Shown: positions 1,790-27,639 of the stretch, in pieces | How positions within the stretch are numbered: the first letter of the stretch is position 1 | Layout of the letters: the number at the start of each line of letters is the position of its first letter | NCBI RefSeq assembly: GCF_009834535.1 | Contig: NC_045701.1 | Coordinates: 92,566,001-92,630,000 of the forward strand | From: Camelus ferus | Taxonomy: Eukaryota | DNA length: 64,000 nucleotides | Direction: 5' to 3' | Position numbers and translations under genes: made by a program | The notes under the pieces: generated by a model | Told to the model about the DNA's origin: nothing | Database searches by the model: none | What the model saw: only the letters and a program-made list of their open reading frames with translations

Positions 1790-2830
1790 TTCAGATAGAT
1801 TTTCTTTTTCAGAGCAGTTTCAGGCTCAAGGCAGAGCTGAGCAGAAAGCAGAGTTCCTGTGCAGCCTCTCCTGCGGACGCACAGCCCCCCCTGCCGTGAA
1901 GCCCCCCGGCAGCACACGCACTGTGATCGGCATGTGGCCGCCAAAGCCTTTACACTGGAATCCCCTCTTAGCCCCAAAGACTCCTTGGAGCCCTCTGTGC
2001 AGCCCCGGGTCTTTGTCTTGTCTCTGTGGTTTTGCTTTCCCAGAATGTGGTGTAGCTGGAATCTTACAGTTGCAGCCTTCGAGGTTGGCTGCTTCGACTT
2101 AGTGATAACTCACATTTGAGGCCCCTNNNNNNNNNNNNNNNNNNNNNNNNNNNNNNNNNNNNNNNNNNNNNNNNNNNNNNNNNNNNNNNNNNNNNNNNNN
2201 NNNNNNNNNNNNNNNNNNNNNNNNNNNNNNNNNNNNNNNNNNNNNNNNNNNNNNNNNNNNNNNNNNNNNNACTATAAACATCCAAGTGCAGGTTCTGTGT
2301 GGATGTGTTTTCATTTCGTTTGAGTAAATACCAACAAGTGCAATTGTTGGATCATATGGTTTAAGAGTATGTTTAGTTTTGTGAGAAACTGCCAAATGGT
2401 CTTCCAGAGCGGCTGTACCATTTTGCTTTCCTGCCAGCAGTGAAGGAGAGTTCCTGTCGCTCCACATTCTCACCGGCAGTTGATGTTGTCAGTGTTCGGA
2501 CAGCCCAGTAGGTGTGTAAGGGTACCTTGCTTTAATTTGCCTTTCCCTCATGGCATATGTTGTGGACCGTCTTTTCAGATGTTTATTTGACAGCTGTATG
2601 TCTTCTCTGCTGATGTGTCTCTTCAGAGCTTTTGCCCATTTTTGAAACTGCATTGTTCATATTCCTATTGTTAAATTATATATAGAGAGTTATATATATG
2701 TATGTAAGAGGTTTTAAAATATATTTAACAGTTCTTTGTATTATGTTTGTCTTCTGAAAGTGTTCTCTCTTGGTCTGTGGCTTGTCTTCTCCTTTTCTTG
2801 AGACTCATAGGTCTTAACGTCAGAGTTGAT
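1790..2830 (-). mobile_element. Old L1 (L1M-type) 3' end, antisense, spanning the first gap
   Basis: ttttcagagcagtttcaggctc 3'-UTR start; ataaacatccaagtgcagg...gtatgtttagttttgtgagaaactgcc typical of antisense ORF2 C-terminus. Confidence 0.7.
2127..2270. other. Assembly gap (144 N)
   Basis: Run of N. Confidence 0.99.
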
Positions 2831-14194: not shown

Positions 14195-15439
14195 GAGGTT
14201 TGGGAGTTTTTAAAAAAATATATCCTAGATACAGTCTTTTGTTAGATGGGTGGCTTGCAAATATTTTCCCTTAGTCTATGTTTGGTCTTTTCACCTCTTA
14301 GCAGGGTATTTCATCGAGAAAAAGTTTTAAATGTTCGTGAGGCCTCATTTATCAGTTTGTCCTTCTATGGGTCATACTTCTGGTTCATGTGTAATGACTC
14401 TTCACCCAGCCTGAGGCTGCAAAGGTGGTTCTCCTGTGTGTTCTTATAAAAGTTCCATAGGTGCCTTTGTCTGTGGTCCATGTGGGTTAGCTTTTGTGGG
14501 CGGGGTGGGGCTTGCCTGTGGGTGTCCAGGTGTTCCAGCACCCCCGTTGTCCCGCCAGTGGGTGGCTTCCGCACCTCTGAGAAGCTCTGCGTGGGTGCAC
14601 TCGCCTGGGTCTGTTTCTCATTGTTTATTGCGTCCTGCTGCCTGTGTCTGTCTCTCCACCAGCACCGCCCTGTCTTCATCACTGTATATGAAAACTCAGC
14701 ACGAGCCAGGTGGATTCTTCCCACTTTAGTCTTCATTTTCAAAACTGTTTTAACTATTCCACTTTGCCTTTCCATGGGGATTTTAGAATTAGCTTGCCTA
14801 TATGCACAAGAAAAGCTTCCTGTGATTGTACTAGGAATTGTGCTGTCCTGTAGATCAGTTTGTGGAGAGTTCATGTTTTTGCTGCATTGAGTCTTCAGTC
14901 CCTGAACAAAGTGTGTCTCCATTTATTTAGGTCGTCTTCAGTTTCTTTAATCAGCATTGTGTTGTTTTCAAAGCATGCAGATCCTGTGCATGTTTTGCTA
15001 GATTTACACCTAAGTTTTTAGTTTAATTTAGAGTGATTAAATGGCATTGCATCTGTAACTCAGCTGTCCACATGTTCGTTTCTAGTATATAGGAATGCGA
15101 TTGAGTTTTGTGTGTTGTCATTATATCCTGTGACTTGCTGATTTCACTGATTAGTTCTAGGAGATGACTTTGGTTTTGTCATTACCTTGGGATTTTTATG
15201 TTTAAACAATCCTATCATTTGAAGATAAGGTGGGGGAGAAGGTGATGGAGATGGAAGTCTGGACTCTCCACTGGGTCTCCTGGTGGTGAGGGGAACCCCT
15301 GGGGGTAGACAGGGCAGGGGTCCAGACTCCACAGATGGGGAAGGAAAGCACCTCCCTGGACTACCCCATTTTTTAAAAGCTGTGTATTTATTGAGGGTTG
15401 CCCTTCTCTGCCCTTCCACTCGCTCTCATTTTTTAAAAA

Positions 15440-16985
15440 ATGATTTATTTATTATTACTATTTAAAAAATTTTATTTTTTAATTTTTAAACACCTTTATT
15501 ATGGTATGATTCCTGTACAGTAAACTACACATAGATGTACAATTTGATGACTTTTGATAGATGTAGACACTCATGAAACTACTGCCACAATCAAGGTAGC
15601 TAACATTTCCATCACTCTCCAATAGGTGCAAGTTTTGAACTCCCAATTTATCCCTTCCCACCCGCTTTATGCCCTGGTAACCATAAGTTTGTTCTCTATG
15701 TCTGTGAGTCTGTTTCTGATTTGTAGATAAGTTCATATGTGTCCTTTTTTTTTAAGAGCCCACATGTAAGTGATGCTATATGGTATTTTTCTTCCTCTTT
15801 ATGGCTTGCTTCACTTAGAATGACCATGCCCAGGTCCATCCATGCTGCTGCAAATGGCATTATTTTATCTTTTTTATTGATGAGTACTATTCCATTGTAC
15901 AAATATGCCACAGCTACTTTATCCAGTCCTCTGTCAGTGGACATTTAGGTTGCTTCTGTATCTTGGCTATTGTAAATAGTGCTGCTGTGAACATTGGGGT
16001 GCTTGTGTCTTCGGATTATATTTTCCTCCAGATAATATGCCCAGGAGTGAGATTGCTGGATCACATGGTAAGTTTATTTTTAGTTTTTAAAGGAAACTCC
16101 ATACTGTCCTCCACAGTGGCTTCCCCAATTTGCATTCCCGCCAGCAGTGCAGGAGGGCTCCCTTTTCTCCACACCCTCCCCAGCATCTGTCGTCGTGGAC
16201 TTTCGGTGACGGCCGCTCTGGCTGGTGTGAGGCAGGACCTCGCTGCAGTTTTGATTTGCGCTTCTCTGACAGTTATGACGCTGAGCGTCTTCTCACGTGC
16301 CTGTTGGCCGTCTGTCTGTCTTCTTTGGAGAGGTGTCTGTTTAGGCCTTCTGCCCATTTTTTGATTGTGTTGCTCATTACTATTTTTTTTGATACTAAGC
16401 TGCATGAGCTGTTTGTATATTCTGGGAATTCGNNNNNNNNNNNNNNNNNNNNNNNNNNNNNNNNNNNNNNNNNNNNNNNNNNNNNNNNNNNNNNNNNNNN
16501 NNNNNNNNNNNNNNNNNNNNNNNNNNNNNNNNNNNNNNNNNNNNNNNNNNNNNNNNNNNNNTTTTATTTCCATGACTTCAGGAGCTGGTTCAAAAAAAAA
16601 TATCGCTGTGATTGGTGTCATCCTCTAGGGGTTTTACAGTATCTGGTCTTACGTTTAGGTCTTTAATCCATTTGAGTTTATGTTTGTACACGGTGTTAGG
16701 GAATGTTCTAATTTCAGTCTTTTATAGGCAGCTGTCCAGTTTCCCAGCGCTGCTTGTTGAAGAGACTGTCTTTTCTCCCCTGTGTGTTCCTGCCTCCTTT
16801 GCTGTAGATTAATGGACCATACGTGCGTGGGTTTACTTTTGGACTTCCTTTTTCCATTGGTCTATGTGTCTGTTTTTGTGCCTGTCCCATACTGTTTTGG
16901 TTACTGTAGCTTTGTAGCATAGCCTGAAGTCAGGGAGCCTGACTCCCTCAGCTCTGTTCTTTTTCAAGACTGTTTTGGCTATTGT
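15440..16985 (-). mobile_element. L1 3' region(s), antisense, relatively young, spanning the second gap
   Basis: ORF 15696-15944(-) ...KIMPFAAAWMDLGMVILSE... is the L1 ORF2 C-terminus; ORF 16714-16920(-) resembles ORF2 YSNQNSM region. Confidence 0.9.
16433..16561. other. Assembly gap (129 N)
   Basis: Run of N. Confidence 0.99.
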
Positions 16986-22603: not shown

Positions 22604-23474
22604 GTGCGCTGGGGCCCCTGGCGTCGTCTCCCGGCTCTTCTCATTAGGTCTCATGGTGGTGGAAGTGCGTACTCCCCCTTTCTGATGCAGATCATGCCTC
22701 AAAGGAGGTTTTAGGTTACAGGTTCATACTGTGTTTGGGAATCAGGAAAAACTCTGGTCTTGCTTAGTTTAGGTTTTCTTTCTCTAATCTCTGGAGCAGT
22801 GTTTCTAAAAGAGTGCTGACTTTATCACTGCTCCGGGAGAGAGTCTTCTGCTGTATGTAGCTTTTAAGTAAAAATGTTCTTAATATTATTAGGTCATTCT
22901 TCTTTTACACTGAAAAATTGCTTTACCTTTGGAGGCCATAATCAGTTAGCTTTTGGACGTAACCTTCTAGGGATTGTGTGGAGGGAAGAGTAGACAAGGG
23001 GCCAGTGCTGCTGATTTCGGGGTTCTGAGAAGCACGCTCTGGAAGCGCCAGTGCTCTGGCCGGGGCGTGTGGAGCCGGTTCTAGGAAGAGACTGTAAACT
23101 GGGTGATGCTGGAAAAGGGAGTGTTTTCCTAGATGTCAGGTTGTTAAGGTTGGGGAAGTCTTCCATGGCTGTATGTTTCAAATGGTCTATTTTTATTGAA
23201 GAAGGGATCTTGGCAAAGTGCTTCTTAGAAGTGAGTATTGGGTACAAGCCTGCTGCACTAGATCTGAGTATCCCAGTTGGAATTTTATCTGAACATTTGG
23301 GAAAGTGCCTGACCCATAAAAGTAAGTACGTCGGGGAGAAGGTAGAAAAAGCAGACTAGTCTTGGGCTCTGAGCTGTTGCCTCAGCCTCAGGCTGGGAAG
23401 TGCTCAAGCTCCTTTGAAGAAAGACCATGTGGAAAGGGTTTCTGATATGGTGGAGTAACCAGCATTGTGACTTT

Positions 23475-24106
23475 TTTTTTTCATTTTTCTGTTTTATTAG
23501 GTAAAGTTGCTACAATTTGACTGCACATGCACAATATATTGCATGTAAATACACACAATATACTGCACGTATTTTTTAAAATTTACATGTATGTACTGTT
23601 CATTGTTTCTAAGAACATTTAGAGCTTTAGCTTTTTAAACTTACATAGTTATCAAGGAATAAAGCCAACCACAAAATAAAAATTAATTTAAAAAGATACA
23701 CACATTCCACTGTTAAAAGCAACATTCTTTAGAATTGCCAAGATATGAACACATCCTAAGTGCATGTCAACAGATGAATGGATAAAGAAGAGGCAGCATG
23801 TATTTGTCATGGAACACAACTCAGCCATAAAAAAGGATATTTTGCCATTTGTGGCCCTTCATTCACTTTTTTTCCCTTCAAAAACCCAGTTTTGTAACTG
23901 GCATAAACATTTCCATTGCATCAAAAACAACAAAATACCTAGAAATCAGCTTAACCAAGGAGGTTACCTATACTCTGAAACCTGTAAAACATTGATGAAG
24001 GAAACTGAAGATGATACAAAGAAATGGAAAGATGTCTTGTGCTCTTGGATTGGAAGAATCAACTTTATCAAAATGGACGTACTACCCAAAGCAATCTGCA
24101 GACCCA
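23475..24106 (-). pseudogene. 5'-truncated retrocopy of an unidentified polyadenylated 3' UTR containing two L1 ORF2 fragments
   Basis: 15-bp TSD CAGCATTGTGACTTT at 23460-23474 and 24107-24121; T10 tail at 23472-23481; minus-strand AATAAA (TTTATT 23493-23498) 11 nt from the tail. Confidence 0.8.
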
Positions 24107-24272
24107 CAGCATTGTGACTTTCTGCTTGGCTGGTTAAAGGTCCAGTTTTCTTGTCGTGTAAACTCATGTTTTACATTATAGATGTCAGTCACCCTAGGAT
24201 GAGATCAGGATGTCTGTGAGACAGCATGATAAAATAATTCTGTTGCTTCATGAAAATAAGTTTCTCTTCCAG

Positions 24273-24380
24273 GTTGTGCTGGCAGGTGCTTTTTATCCAA
24301 ATTACTTCACTTTTGGGCAGCCTGACGAAGAGATGGCAGTGCGGGAGCTGGCGGGCAAAGACCCAAAGACCACCGTTGTG
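24273..24380 (+). CDS. TDRD9: TDRD9 exon 15/29
   Basis: ctcttccag| VVLAGAFYPNYFTFGQPDEEMAVRELAGKDPKTTVV |gtaggt. Confidence 0.96.
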
Positions 24381-26252
24381 GTAGGTGGGCCCTCCCCGGG
24401 GGGCGGGGGGCTGAGCTGTCGGTTTCTAGCAGGGGCTTCACTCCAGCGTGGCTGATGCGGAGCGTTTTCTCTCTTCATTCGTCTCTGTTTGTATGAGTAC
24501 TGAGTGGATCTTCCCCTGAAGTGAGTGTTACGGCCTTTCACACACACCTCCTGCTTCCAGTCTTGCTTCCCTTTCTGCAGACCTGGTCGTGAAAGAAAGT
24601 CCTAAGATGTTATGTGTTCATTAGCCTGGTGTTGATCGATCGTGTGCCATTGTGAGGGATTTGAGAGACTTCTCCATGAATTTAAGGACGTTTAGTTAAC
24701 CAGCAGCTTCATTTCACACAAGTGGAGACAGTTTGGTTGGCAGCATTGCTGTGGTTTACACTCCAATCCCCATTCGTGCCCAACAGAACCACCTGGAGAG
24801 GGTCTGTTTCAGAATTCAGACTGAAGGGCCCCTGCCGCACAGCTGAGCTAGAGAGTGCGGCCTGGACAGCAGTGTTCAGTAGCCCGTGCTTTTAGCACAT
24901 GCTCTGGGAGAACCTGATGGTCAGTCACAGGCGCTGACTGTTGGGCCAACATCTGTGGACCTCTGTTTGAACCTGAGCACAGAACAGCCTCAGGACACAG
25001 CGGGAGTGGAGCGTTTGGGAACCAGACTCTTCTTGGCCTGCGTCTAATAAAGGGCACAGAGCACTTAGCAGAGTCCCTGGCGTACAGTAAATGCTCCATT
25101 TTCATTCCTGTTAGTGTTTCCATCGCTACTGTTACTGAAGAGGTGGAGTTCAAAGGGCGGGTGTCACGGATTCCCGGAGCACTGCAGACAGAGCACTGGA
25201 CGGGAGCTGGAGCTCACGCTGGGCGCTCGCAGCTAACTTGCAGTTTATACCAAGGGAGGGGATTTTCATTTAAAAGGTGGTCATTAGCCTTTGGTTGCTA
25301 TTGAGGAGGTATGATGGGGCCCCAGCCCTCCTGGTGGGCTTCCTCTCCCCGCTGGGGCTGATCTCCCTGGCCTGTGCGCTGGGGGAAGAGCCCCGCGGGA
25401 CACTCCCCCTCTGCGGAGCTGTGCCTGCCTGCTGCTCCCCGTGCCCCCGGGGGCCAGAAGAATGCCTGCTGTGTGTGTGGCAGAGCTGGCCTTACCGTCT
25501 GAGAGGGCCTCTGTTAAGGGCTTTGACTCGTTGTTCTCTGAGCGTCACGCTGACTCTGAGTGGGGATCTGTCTTCATCCTTAGCTGATGACGCAGCTGGG
25601 GAGTCCTGGGGCATCCATCACCTGCCTCAGGAAACTTGACAAGCAGGATTTGAACGCAGGCCTGAGTCCACAGCTCTTGTTTTTCGTCCACCCGCTGCCT
25701 CTCCTGGAGTTGTGTGGGCCCTGGGATAAGTAGGACCTGGTCCCAGGGGCAGGCACTCCAGGTTTCGTGCTGGAGCCAGAGCTCGGAGCGCGAGCCTCCC
25801 TGCCGTGGGGAGGAAGCACGTCGGGCGGCGGAGATGGGCAGCCCCGGCTGGGCAGGTGGGGTGTGAGTTTACCTCTGGCTCTGGGCGTGAGGAAATTCTG
25901 CCTCCTCTGACTAGTGGTGTATTTTCCTTGAAAGTTTAAGTTCCCGTTACTGTTTGTGTAGAAACAATTATGTTTTAAAAAGATGTGTTTAGTCAGCTTG
26001 ATGATTTTTAGGTTAAAAAAACAGGTCTTCATTTTTCTTTTGGACTTTTGAACTATTTTAACAGGAAGAATTAGCCAGTATTTGACATGTGTTTATCATT
26101 AAACTCACTTATAATCTAAACGTCATCAGTCATTACACACGGTGCCCTAGAGCCTGCCTCTGATGGTGAGAGGCAGCGTGCTCTGTGTGGACGCAGCAGC
26201 TGTCCTGCCAGCCCTTCGCCTGCTCTCACCGAGGCCCTGTTGTGTCTTGCAG

Positions 26253-26353
26253 CTGAAGCACATCCCTCCCTATGGGTTTCTCTACTACAAACAACTGCAG
26301 TCTCTCTTCAGACAGTGCGGCCAAGTCAAATCCATCGTGTTTGATGGCGCGAA
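26253..26353 (+). CDS. TDRD9: TDRD9 exon 16/29
   Basis: gtcttgcag| LKHIPPYGFLYYKQLQSLFRQCGQVKSIVFDGA(K) |gtaagt. Confidence 0.96.
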
Positions 26354-27639
26354 GTAAGTAGCGTGCTTTAGCTGTCTGCTGCAGTCGGGAAAGAACCGTG
26401 AGGGCCTCGCGTTTATGGGCCCAGTTGTGTAAAGTGAGCGCGTGTGGACATGGGTCTTCCCGAGGGCCGCTGCAGGCATGCTTGCAGTGGAGCTCTGCTT
26501 TCTCTTGTTGTCAGTAGCAGTTTATCTTGTCTTGCAACCAAGTGACCTCCTCCAGGTTCTAAGCTGTGTGGCCAGCGGCCTGATGCCCAGAAGGCTGAGC
26601 AGCGCGCCGAGGTGCTGAGAGCGGCTGTCCCTGGTGCGTCTGTCCCCGGTCTCACAGCGAGTTACCCCCAGGTCACTGGTGCCCACAGGAGAGCTTATCC
26701 GCCTAGAGTTACTTAGAACTTCCGAGGTCTGAATATTTTTGGAAGACAAAAACTGCAGTTACACCTGACCTTATTTTAATGGCAGGTGAGGACGGGCGGT
26801 GTGTTTTGGAGAATCGCTTTGAGTTTTCACCTCCAAGAAGGAATGTTTGTGCACAGAAAAGGCTGTTTACAGTTTTAAAATTGATTTTTAAGTTTTTAGA
26901 AATATTTTTCTGGTGTTCTATAAATTTTATTTAACATACAAAGCTGTGTAAATTTAGCACATAGGAAACTTAGTTTTTCTTTGATTAATGTCTAATAACT
27001 CAAGTTAAACATACTCACTCCTAAAATTTGGGCTAATTGCTTCAGACAGTTTAAGCTCCGTTCCTATGACTAATGTATTGGTTTTCTCTGTAAGTGTGTG
27101 AATGCCTCATGTGGCAAATTCACAACCCTAATTAGAACCTTTCTCAGTACTTTCATCTGCTGCAGGTTTAACTAAACGTACAGTGTCTCGAGTTTGCTCA
27201 GATAATCTACCACAAGTTACAGCAGTCAGACTCCTGGTCACGTGTGTGACGTTGCCTATTTGAAACTGGGCTCGCAGCTGTGGTCCTGCCGGAGTGTGCG
27301 GGGCCCCGGCTGCAGGCATGGGGCTGCTCCCCCGGCTGGTCTGGGTGGGCAGCATCTGGCCTCTCGCCCCTGGCAGCCCCTGGCAGCCCCTGGCCTTGGT
27401 CTTCACTGCAGGCTTGGAGTCTGTGTGCGCCAGGGCTCTCTCTGTAGATGTTTTAAGTCTATGATTCCTCATAGATTTCTGATGTATGGTCACAATACCA
27501 ATGTCATGCCAATCACTTGAGGGTGTAACAGTGTTCCTCTGGGTGTAACAGTTCCTGTGTGTCAAATTTTAAAGGCAAAAATGACATAAAATAGTGGTTG
27601 AAAGAGTAAAGCCTGCCCCTCTTGGCACCAAGCAGGGCC

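What the first reader, a model, noticed from the sequence alone, without database searches (positions are those of the whole stretch)
23460..24121. Orphan retrocopy: TSD-flanked, polyadenylated 3' UTR fragment carrying scrambled L1 pieces
Seen: exact 15-bp TSD CAGCATTGTGACTTT (23460-23474 and 24107-24121) around 632 bp. On the minus strand the insert ends ...tgtagcaactttacctAATAAAacagaaaaatg(A)10, a cellular-type poly(A) end, not an L1 end. Inside, opposite to the tail, lie an L1 ORF2 C-terminal piece (~23686-23855), a ~50-nt non-L1 spacer and an L1 RT-region piece (~23905-24106). These pieces are out of L1 order. The insert ends ~150 nt before exon 15 (24273). Known: L1 machinery retrotransposes mRNAs and 3' transductions with TSDs and 5' truncation. 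Inference, preferred because the L1 parts look diverged: a copy of the last 0.6 kb of an unknown transcript whose 3' UTR holds old antisense L1 fragments. Alternatives are template-switch chimerism or an orphan 3' transduction. If many copies exist it would be an undescribed non-autonomous composite element.
Basis: partly seen in the sequence, partly recalled or inferred. Interest (0 to 1): 0.7.

Follow-up and report, generated by a model that had tools for sequence, protein, structure and literature searches.

The report
L1-made retrocopy in camel TDRD9 intron
A 632-letter piece of DNA in a camel gene intron is a reverse-transcribed copy of the tail end of some repeat-rich RNA, pasted in once by the LINE-1 machinery; this is a real but ordinary kind of genomic scar, and its parent RNA remains unidentified.

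Summary
An exact 15-bp duplication (23460-74 and 24107-21) brackets 632 bp. On the minus strand the insert ends AATAAA, 11 nt, then a 7-10 A run. Two LINE-1 ORF2 fragments lie on the plus strand, out of L1 order.

Two new results:
- Contigs from a non-camelid mammal have an empty site with one copy of the 15-mer, contiguous with both flanks. The whole block therefore arrived in one step.
- An independent contig (L001, host unknown) has the same C-terminal-piece/spacer/RT-piece joint and the same frameshift in the RT piece (89% identity). It continues with more L1 ORF2 beyond the camel insert's end.

So the scrambling and decay were already in the source RNA, the camel copy is 5'-truncated, and template switching at that joint is rejected.

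All 14 DNA runs of two camel labels hold the insert. The source locus and copy number could not be determined. A single-locus transcript, an orphan L1 3' transduction and a low-copy non-autonomous family all remain open.

Verdict: a new member of a known kind, of low interest.

The parts
23460..23474 (.). Left copy of the 15-bp target-site duplication, next to the poly(A) end
   Evidence: Exact 15-mer with two copies only in the window and 0 of 100 shuffles. The outgroup has one copy at this site.
23475..23481 (-). Poly(A) tail. 7 A lie beyond the TSD. The T-run 23472-23481 is 10 long if the TSD's TTT is counted.
   Evidence: Read directly.
23493..23498 (-). AATAAA polyadenylation signal, 11 nt before the A-run
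   Evidence: Read directly.
23482..23692 (-). 3'-terminal segment with no recognised L1 coding similarity. It contains a 24-nt tandem duplication (23525-23571).
   Evidence: No second copy in the window. Direct repeats D1/D2. No protein or DNA relatives found.
23693..23853 (+). Decayed L1 ORF2 C-terminal fragment with one in-frame stop, antisense to the retrocopy's tail.
   Evidence: Translation. 70% nucleotide similarity to the L1 fragment at window 16011-15851. The motif was recognised from knowledge of L1 ORF2p.
23854..23908 (.). Spacer of about 55 nt between the two L1 pieces, not recognisable as L1
   Evidence: Conserved together with both neighbours in contig L001.
23909..24106 (+). Decayed L1 ORF2 fragment from just after the RT domain, with an internal frameshift. 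It ends at the 5' truncation point of the retrocopy.
   Evidence: 73 L1 ORF2-fragment hits. The frameshift is shared with P0001/L001. L001 continues with L1 ORF2 past this point.
24107..24121 (.). Right copy of the 15-bp target-site duplication
   Evidence: Camel RNA-run contigs L005 and L006 cross this junction without a gap.
24273..24380 (+). Downstream host-gene exon (108 nt, 36 codons), 151 nt from the right TSD. The insert is antisense to the gene.
   Evidence: cag acceptor and gt donor read directly. The peptide is invariant across the 15 ORFs aligned, out of 50 homologous ORFs from other mammals. The gene name TDRD9 comes from note s1-149715 and is unchecked.

Best explanation
This is a single LINE-1 ORF2p-mediated retrocopy, made by target-primed reverse transcription. 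It copies the last 0.63 kb of a polyadenylated RNA polymerase II transcript.

The plus strand was nicked after ...GACTTT. The TTT end primed on the RNA's poly(A) tail, and reverse transcription stopped or was cut off 632 nt in. A second nick 15 bp away gave the duplication.

The RNA most likely came from one L1-rich source locus, such as an lncRNA, an unspliced transcript or a long 3' UTR. That locus was already a mosaic of two decayed, antisense L1 ORF2 fragments plus about 210 nt of other sequence carrying its own AATAAA.

The copy sits antisense in a TDRD9 intron, is present in two camel labels, and shows no sign of function.

Shown: the one-step insertion, the TPRT hallmarks, the composite existing before the copy, and the 5' truncation. 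Inferred: a single source locus, and that the transcript did not start at an upstream active L1.
For: - Exact 15-bp TSD, with 0 of 100 shuffles giving two matches.
- AATAAA, 11 nt, then an A-run on the minus strand.
- Empty site with one copy of the 15-mer (13 of 15 identical), contiguous with both flanks, in outgroup contig L007. L008 and L009 give the same BLAST pattern, with the same 159-nt gap between the flank matches.
- Contig L001 aligns to 23801-24106 across the C-terminal-piece/spacer/RT-piece joint. Identity is 89% at aligned bases, K2P 0.117.
- L001 shares the reading-frame shift inside the RT piece. Both read KIPRN.LNQG.YLYSE where intact L1 reads KYL.INLTKE.
- L001 continues with L1 ORF2 sequence where the camel insert stops.
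- Only one other composite-bearing ORF turned up among 5.8 billion proteins.
- All 14 DNA runs of organisms A and B hold at least 0.75 of the sampled words of 23200-24400. A run lacking the insert could hold at most about 0.46.
Against: - The source locus was not found, so 'single locus' and 'not L1-initiated' are not shown.
- Finding even one more composite copy in a database that samples camelid-like host DNA thinly could hint at more than one genomic copy.
- The nick site TTT|C is only a loose fit to the L1 endonuclease consensus TTTT|A.
- The left 70 nt of L001 are unrelated to the camel sequence (foreign-looking; possibly a chimeric contig). L001 therefore says nothing about the 3' half of the insert.
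Confidence: 0.5

Rival explanations
1. Orphan L1 3' transduction. A full-length L1 read through its own weak poly(A) signal and ended at the downstream AATAAA. Reverse transcription then stopped inside the transduced flank, so no part of the driving L1 was copied.
For: - Same TPRT hallmarks.
- The content is L1-rich, AT-rich, non-genic-looking DNA, as found around full-length L1s.
- In L001 an L1 ORF1 fragment (Pfam PF02994, E = 5e-22) lies on the retro-transcript's strand about 0.45 kb 5' of the camel truncation point.
- First-stage notes report several candidate transductions in this genome (unchecked).
Against: - In L001 the sense ORF1 is followed directly by antisense ORF2 debris, not by a sense ORF2, a 3' UTR and a poly(A) signal. 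It is not a full-length L1 upstream of the segment.
- That ORF1 is itself broken (it stops at L001:699).
- The L001 contig may be chimeric.
- No source locus was seen.
Confidence: 0.25
2. A 5'-truncated copy of a low-copy, undescribed non-autonomous L1-dependent composite element. It could be HAL1-like: L1 5' end and ORF1, then inverted ORF2 debris, then a private 3' end with AATAAA. Copies would be mobilised repeatedly by L1.
For: - A second, independent composite copy exists (L001), with K2P 0.117. That is below the 0.21-0.35 seen between camel and the outgroup in the flanking introns.
- L001 has L1 ORF1 ending near the ORF1/ORF2 boundary just 5' of the composite.
- HAL1 families arose several times in mammals (PMC5753468, citing Bao & Jurka 2010).
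Against: - Only one further copy in 5.8 billion ORFs.
- No copy elsewhere in the 64-kb window.
- L001's ORF1 is broken and the contig has a foreign left end.
- L001's host is unknown, so the low divergence could simply be orthology in a slowly evolving lineage.
- No tail or TSD was seen for L001.
Confidence: 0.12
3. A rearranged L1 insertion in its own right (twin priming or similar). On this reading 23482-23692 is a lineage-specific L1 3' UTR in sense orientation and the ORF2 pieces are inverted.
For: - L1 3' UTRs are about 200 nt, lineage-specific, and end in AATAAA plus a tail.
- From memory only, the last 130 nt or so contain three collinear 10-12-mers resembling the common L1M-type 3' end.
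Against: - Twin priming puts the L1 position nearest the 3' segment at the TSD side. Here the order is the reverse.
- The joint and the frameshift predate the insertion.
- No similarity to any other L1 in the window.
Confidence: 0.06
4. A chimeric retrocopy made by template switching during this insertion event. The reverse transcriptase would have jumped from a polyadenylated RNA (23482-23692) to a second RNA carrying the antisense L1 mosaic.
For: L1 reverse transcriptase is known to switch templates. The 23692/23693 joint could not be examined in L001, because that contig diverges earlier.
Against: - The L1-L1 joint is certainly older than the event.
- The second template would have to be an antisense-L1 RNA.
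- There is no extra A-run or microhomology at 23692/23693.
Confidence: 0.04

Closest known systems
L1-mediated processed retrocopies (processed pseudogenes), especially 5'-truncated copies holding 3' UTR or lncRNA sequence only
   Same: TSD of 7-20 bp, a poly(A) tail after a cellular-type AATAAA, 5' truncation, one-step arrival with an empty site in an outgroup, and a dead, non-coding copy.
   Different: No parent gene was identified. About 60% of the copied RNA is old L1 debris in antisense, which is unusual for an mRNA 3' UTR.
Orphan L1 3' transductions
   Same: Non-L1-terminated sequence with all TPRT hallmarks and no sense L1 body; repeat-rich intergenic-type content.
   Different: Membership needs a source lying just 3' of a full-length L1. 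That could not be tested, and the one related contig does not show it.
HAL1 (half-L1) non-autonomous L1 derivatives
   Same: In the related contig L001, L1 ORF1 on the retro-transcript strand ends near the ORF1/ORF2 boundary and is followed by non-ORF2-sense sequence.
   Different: No ORF1 is present in the camel insert. L001's ORF1 is broken. No multiple copies were shown. The HAL1 consensus was not available for comparison, and the Bao & Jurka paper is not held.
L1 twin-priming inversions
   Same: L1 coding pieces are inverted relative to the poly(A) end, inside one TSD.
   Different: The piece order is opposite to what twin priming gives. The joint predates the insertion. The tail segment is not demonstrably an L1 3' UTR.

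Membership tests
L1-mediated (TPRT) retrocopy | Target-site duplication of about 7-20 bp flanking the insert exactly | tested here: met
   15 of 15 identical at 23460-74 and 24107-21; 0 of 100 shuffles gave two matches.
L1-mediated (TPRT) retrocopy | Poly(A) tail at the 3' end, preceded by a polyadenylation signal 10-30 nt upstream | tested here: met
   AATAAA (23498-23493, minus strand), 11 nt, then 7-10 A.
L1-mediated (TPRT) retrocopy | Empty orthologous site with a single copy of the target sequence | tested here: met
   L007 has CAAAATTGTGACTTT once, contiguous with both flanks. L008 and L009 give the same BLAST pattern, with the same 159-nt gap between the flank matches.
L1-mediated (TPRT) retrocopy | First-strand nick at a T-rich L1 endonuclease site (consensus 5'-TTTT|A) | tested here: inconclusive
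   The site is 5'-ACTTT|CTGC on the plus strand. It is T-rich 5' of the nick, but C rather than A follows.
L1-mediated (TPRT) retrocopy | An identifiable source locus or transcript collinear with the copy | not testable with these tools
Pattern scans gave only chance 20-mers.
Ordinary 5'-truncated L1 insertion | L1 coding sequence in the same sense as the poly(A) tail and collinear with L1 | tested here: not met
   Both ORF2 pieces are antisense to the tail and out of L1 order.
L1 twin-priming inversion | One inverted segment whose 3'-most L1 position abuts the 5' TSD, with the joint created at the insertion event | tested here: not met
   The RT piece (the upstream L1 position) abuts the TSD. 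The joint is shared with independent contig L001.
Orphan L1 3' transduction | Source segment lies immediately 3' of a full-length sense L1 | not testable with these tools
   Only L001 is available. It shows a broken sense ORF1 but no sense ORF2 or 3' UTR.
HAL1-like or other non-autonomous composite family | Multiple dispersed copies, each with its own TSD and tail, sharing one consensus | tested here: inconclusive
   One further composite copy with no tail region. None in the window. The genome-wide count cannot be obtained.
HAL1-like or other non-autonomous composite family | ORF1 retained and ORF2 lost in the full-length element | tested here: inconclusive
   L001:699-1025(-) matches Pfam PF02994 with E = 5e-22, but the ORF is interrupted and the contig may be chimeric.

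The most novel reading that the evidence does not exclude
The insert is a 5'-truncated member of an undescribed, low-copy camelid (or wider laurasiatherian) non-autonomous L1-dependent element. The element would be built from an L1 5' end and ORF1, inverted ORF2 debris, and a private 3' end with its own poly(A) signal. That would be an independently born HAL1-like family.
Probability: 0.1. Interest if true: 0.5.

Novelty: new member of a known kind. Interest (0 to 1): 0.2.

Why it matters
As it stands it matters little. It is one more dead L1-made retrocopy in an intron, antisense to its host gene, with no sign of function.

It is a clean worked example. The TSD, the tail, the empty site and an independent relative of the source together show that 'scrambled' repeat content in a retrocopy can be inherited from the template RNA rather than made at insertion.

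It would gain interest only if a genome-wide search showed many copies, meaning a new non-autonomous family, possibly HAL1-like. A source next to an active L1 would give a marker for tracing that L1's activity in camelids.

Tried and rejected
   - Those places were sent to no search tool afterwards. All later queries and local BLASTs used the pieces beside them.
2. Pattern scans gave only isolated chance 20-22-mers with no extended homology:
   - spacer 20-mer in metagenome contigs: 3 hits;
   - 3'-end 20-mer in genome contigs and viral contigs: 6 hits.
3. Exact look-ups of four short window ORFs found no record: two inside the insert, one spanning its right junction, one in the left flank.
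4. The search of earlier findings by sequence and for HAL1 words came back blank.
The L1 3' UTR idea stays an untested memory lead.
6. Pfam found nothing on the neighbouring exon peptide. The gene name rests on another note.
7. The Bao & Jurka HAL1 paper (PMC2923044) is not held. The assembly accession of L001 appears in no paper.
8. I considered and rejected reading anything into both camel RNA contigs stopping at 24034. The shared 30-mer there is a conserved L1 stretch that many L1 copies could carry.
9. I considered and dropped the 117-codon plus-strand ORF 23764-24117 as a feature. It is antisense to the copied RNA, and its openness in L001 is a selection effect of searching an ORF database.
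10. Contigs for P0076 (521 contigs) and for P0074, P0078, P0082, P0086 and P0044 look primate or human and were not fetched.
11. L001's host is unknown. I did not take it for human, because K2P 0.117 seems too low for camel-human neutral DNA. I still made no further search for it.
12. I did not run the big representative search or the third word search. Neither could reach the non-coding 3' segment or the camel genome.

Full report
**1. The observation**

The 15-mer CAGCATTGTGACTTT occurs exactly twice in the 64-kb window, at 23460-23474 and 24107-24121. No dinucleotide shuffle gave two matches (also family D3).

The 632 bp between the copies start on the plus strand with a T-run at 23472-23481. 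Its first three T belong to the duplicated 15-mer. On the minus strand the insert therefore ends AATAAA (23498-23493), acagaaaaatg, then 7-10 A.

Six-frame translation shows two L1 ORF2-like stretches, both on the plus strand:
- A C-terminal piece. Its limits, 23693-23851, come from 70% nucleotide similarity to another L1 fragment at window 16011-15851.
- A piece from just after the RT domain, about 23909-24106. Used as a protein query, it gave 73 hits to L1 ORF2 fragments.

The C-terminal piece comes first, so the order is not that of L1. About 55 nt of unrecognisable spacer separate the two pieces. The 211 nt next to the tail (23482-23692) have no second copy in the window.

**2. One event, shown by an empty site**

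The ORF that contains the neighbouring exon (24210-24452) has 50 homologues among ORFs called on public contigs. The closest, P0075, lies on Logan contigs L007-L012 from several runs.

L007 aligns to the window on both sides of the insert:
- L007 2122-2336 aligns to window 23129-23349.
- L007 2496-2923 aligns to window 24111-24534.
- Only 159 nt lie between these in L007, where the camel has 761 nt.

I then made a global alignment of L007 to the camel flanks joined through a single 15-mer. It shows ...AAACCAAAATTGTGACTTTCTGCTTG... in L007, which is one copy of the target with 13 of 15 bases identical, continuous with both flanks.

The flanking introns differ by K2P 0.21-0.35, so L007 is from a non-camelid mammal. 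The whole 632-bp block, L1 pieces included, therefore arrived in one step after that split.

**3. Spread in camels**

Notes from other windows identify the genome as a camel (unchecked by me).

All 14 DNA runs of two organism labels hold 0.75-0.80 of the sampled words of 23200-24400. A run lacking the insert could hold at most about 0.46.

Two RNA-run contigs (L005 and L006) are 99.5% identical to the window. They cross the right TSD into the insert without a gap.

**4. The scrambling was in the template**

It found one protein, P0001, that matches 95% of its length. P0001 covers the end of the C-terminal piece, the spacer and the RT piece.

Its contig L001 (NCBI GCA_024712465.1, 1027 bp) aligns to window 23801-24106:
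- identity is 80% counting gaps;
- identity is 89% at aligned bases, K2P 0.117.

Three points follow.
- The C-terminal-piece/spacer/RT-piece joint is shared. It was not made during this insertion.
- Both sequences read KIPRN.LNQG.YLYSE in one frame, where intact L1 reads KYL.INLTKE...LY.EN (compare P0015 with plus frame 2). They share the frame-shifting indel, so the L1 piece was already decayed in their common ancestor.
- L001 continues with L1 ORF2 sequence (…RSNATPVKILTTFLTELEQ…) exactly where the camel insert meets its TSD. The camel copy is therefore 5'-truncated relative to a longer source.

It rejects template switching for that joint.

**5. Limits of L001**

- Its first 70 nt or so are unrelated to the camel sequence. 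By eye they look like a CxxC...CxxC coding fragment.
- The contig may therefore be a chimeric assembly. It says nothing about the 3' half of the insert.
- Its host is unknown.
- Beyond the ORF2 piece, L001:699-1025 on the minus strand is an L1 ORF1 RNA-binding domain (Pfam PF02994, E = 5e-22). This is the same strand as the copied RNA. That ORF1 is interrupted.

This arrangement allows a HAL1-like reading or an L1-initiated transcript, but one possibly chimeric contig cannot carry that conclusion.

**6. Mechanism**

The geometry fits target-primed reverse transcription by L1 ORF2p:
- The plus strand was nicked after ...GACTTT.
- The TTT 3' end paired with the RNA's poly(A) tail.
- cDNA synthesis ran 632 nt.
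- A second nick 15 bp away gave the duplication.

The nick site TTT|C is only a loose match to the TTTT|A consensus. The copy lies antisense to the host gene, 151 nt from the next exon and outside the usual branch-point zone. Nothing suggests a function.

**7. What stays open**

The decisive question is whether the source is one locus, a locus just 3' of a full-length L1, or many copies. Answering it needs a search of the camel genome, which these tools do not offer.

- Pattern scans of the metagenome, prokaryote-genome and viral collections returned only chance 20-mers.
- Exact ORF look-ups were blank.

My odds:

| Reading | Odds |
|---|---|
| Single-locus polyadenylated transcript (lncRNA-like or long 3' UTR) | 0.50 |
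| Orphan L1 3' transduction | 0.25 |
| Low-copy non-autonomous family | 0.12 |
| Rearranged L1 whose 3' UTR I cannot recognise | 0.06 |
| Template switch at the 23692/23693 joint | 0.04 |

The L1 3' UTR idea rests only on remembered 10-12-mers. Two remembered 20-mers of that L1 end did not match at up to 3 mismatches.

- Places 23755-23793 were sent to no search tool.
- Contigs likely to be primate or human (P0076 and its relatives, P0044) were not fetched.

**9. Verdict**

It is an ordinary L1-made retrocopy of a repeat-rich RNA 3' end. The source is still unknown, and interest is low unless a genome-wide search reveals a family.

Noticed in passing
window 23764-24117 (+): A 117-codon ATG ORF runs through the end of the L1 C-terminal piece, the spacer and the RT piece, and stops inside the right TSD. 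It is antisense to the copied RNA. I take it for a leftover of L1 coding sequence plus chance. The matching ORF in L001 was found because the database holds only ORFs.
   Followed up: partly
L005 and L006 (Logan SRR36380800 and SRR36380802) = window 24034-27455 and 24034-25598: RNA-seq runs labelled 'reproductive system metagenome' assemble a contig of up to 12.5 kb. The 3.4 kb fetched is colinear genomic TDRD9 sequence (introns and exons) at 99.5% identity, which points to pre-mRNA or DNA carry-over. Both contigs stop at the same base, 24034, inside a conserved L1 stretch.
   Followed up: partly
L001:1-70: The left end of the NCBI contig JAMQYI012716561.1 is unrelated to the mammalian L1 mosaic that follows. 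It reads like a small CxxC...CxxC zinc-ribbon coding fragment, so the contig is probably a chimeric metagenome contig.
   Followed up: no
window 23525-23571: A 24-nt tandem duplication (CACAATATATTGCATGTA / CACAATATACTGCACGTA, 89% identity) lies inside the non-L1 3' segment.
   Followed up: no
window 23658-23663 (+): The insert brings an AATAAA in the sense of the host gene into the intron. There is no evidence that it is used.
   Followed up: no
window 14918-14953 and 15851-16011 (-): Another pair of L1 ORF2 fragments lies on the minus strand, again with the C-terminal piece 5' of an RT-region piece, about 900 nt apart. This is probably two separate old L1 insertions. An N-run (16433-16561) lies next to them.
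   Followed up: no
window 2127-2270 and 16433-16561: Two runs of N (assembly gaps or masked stretches).
   Followed up: no
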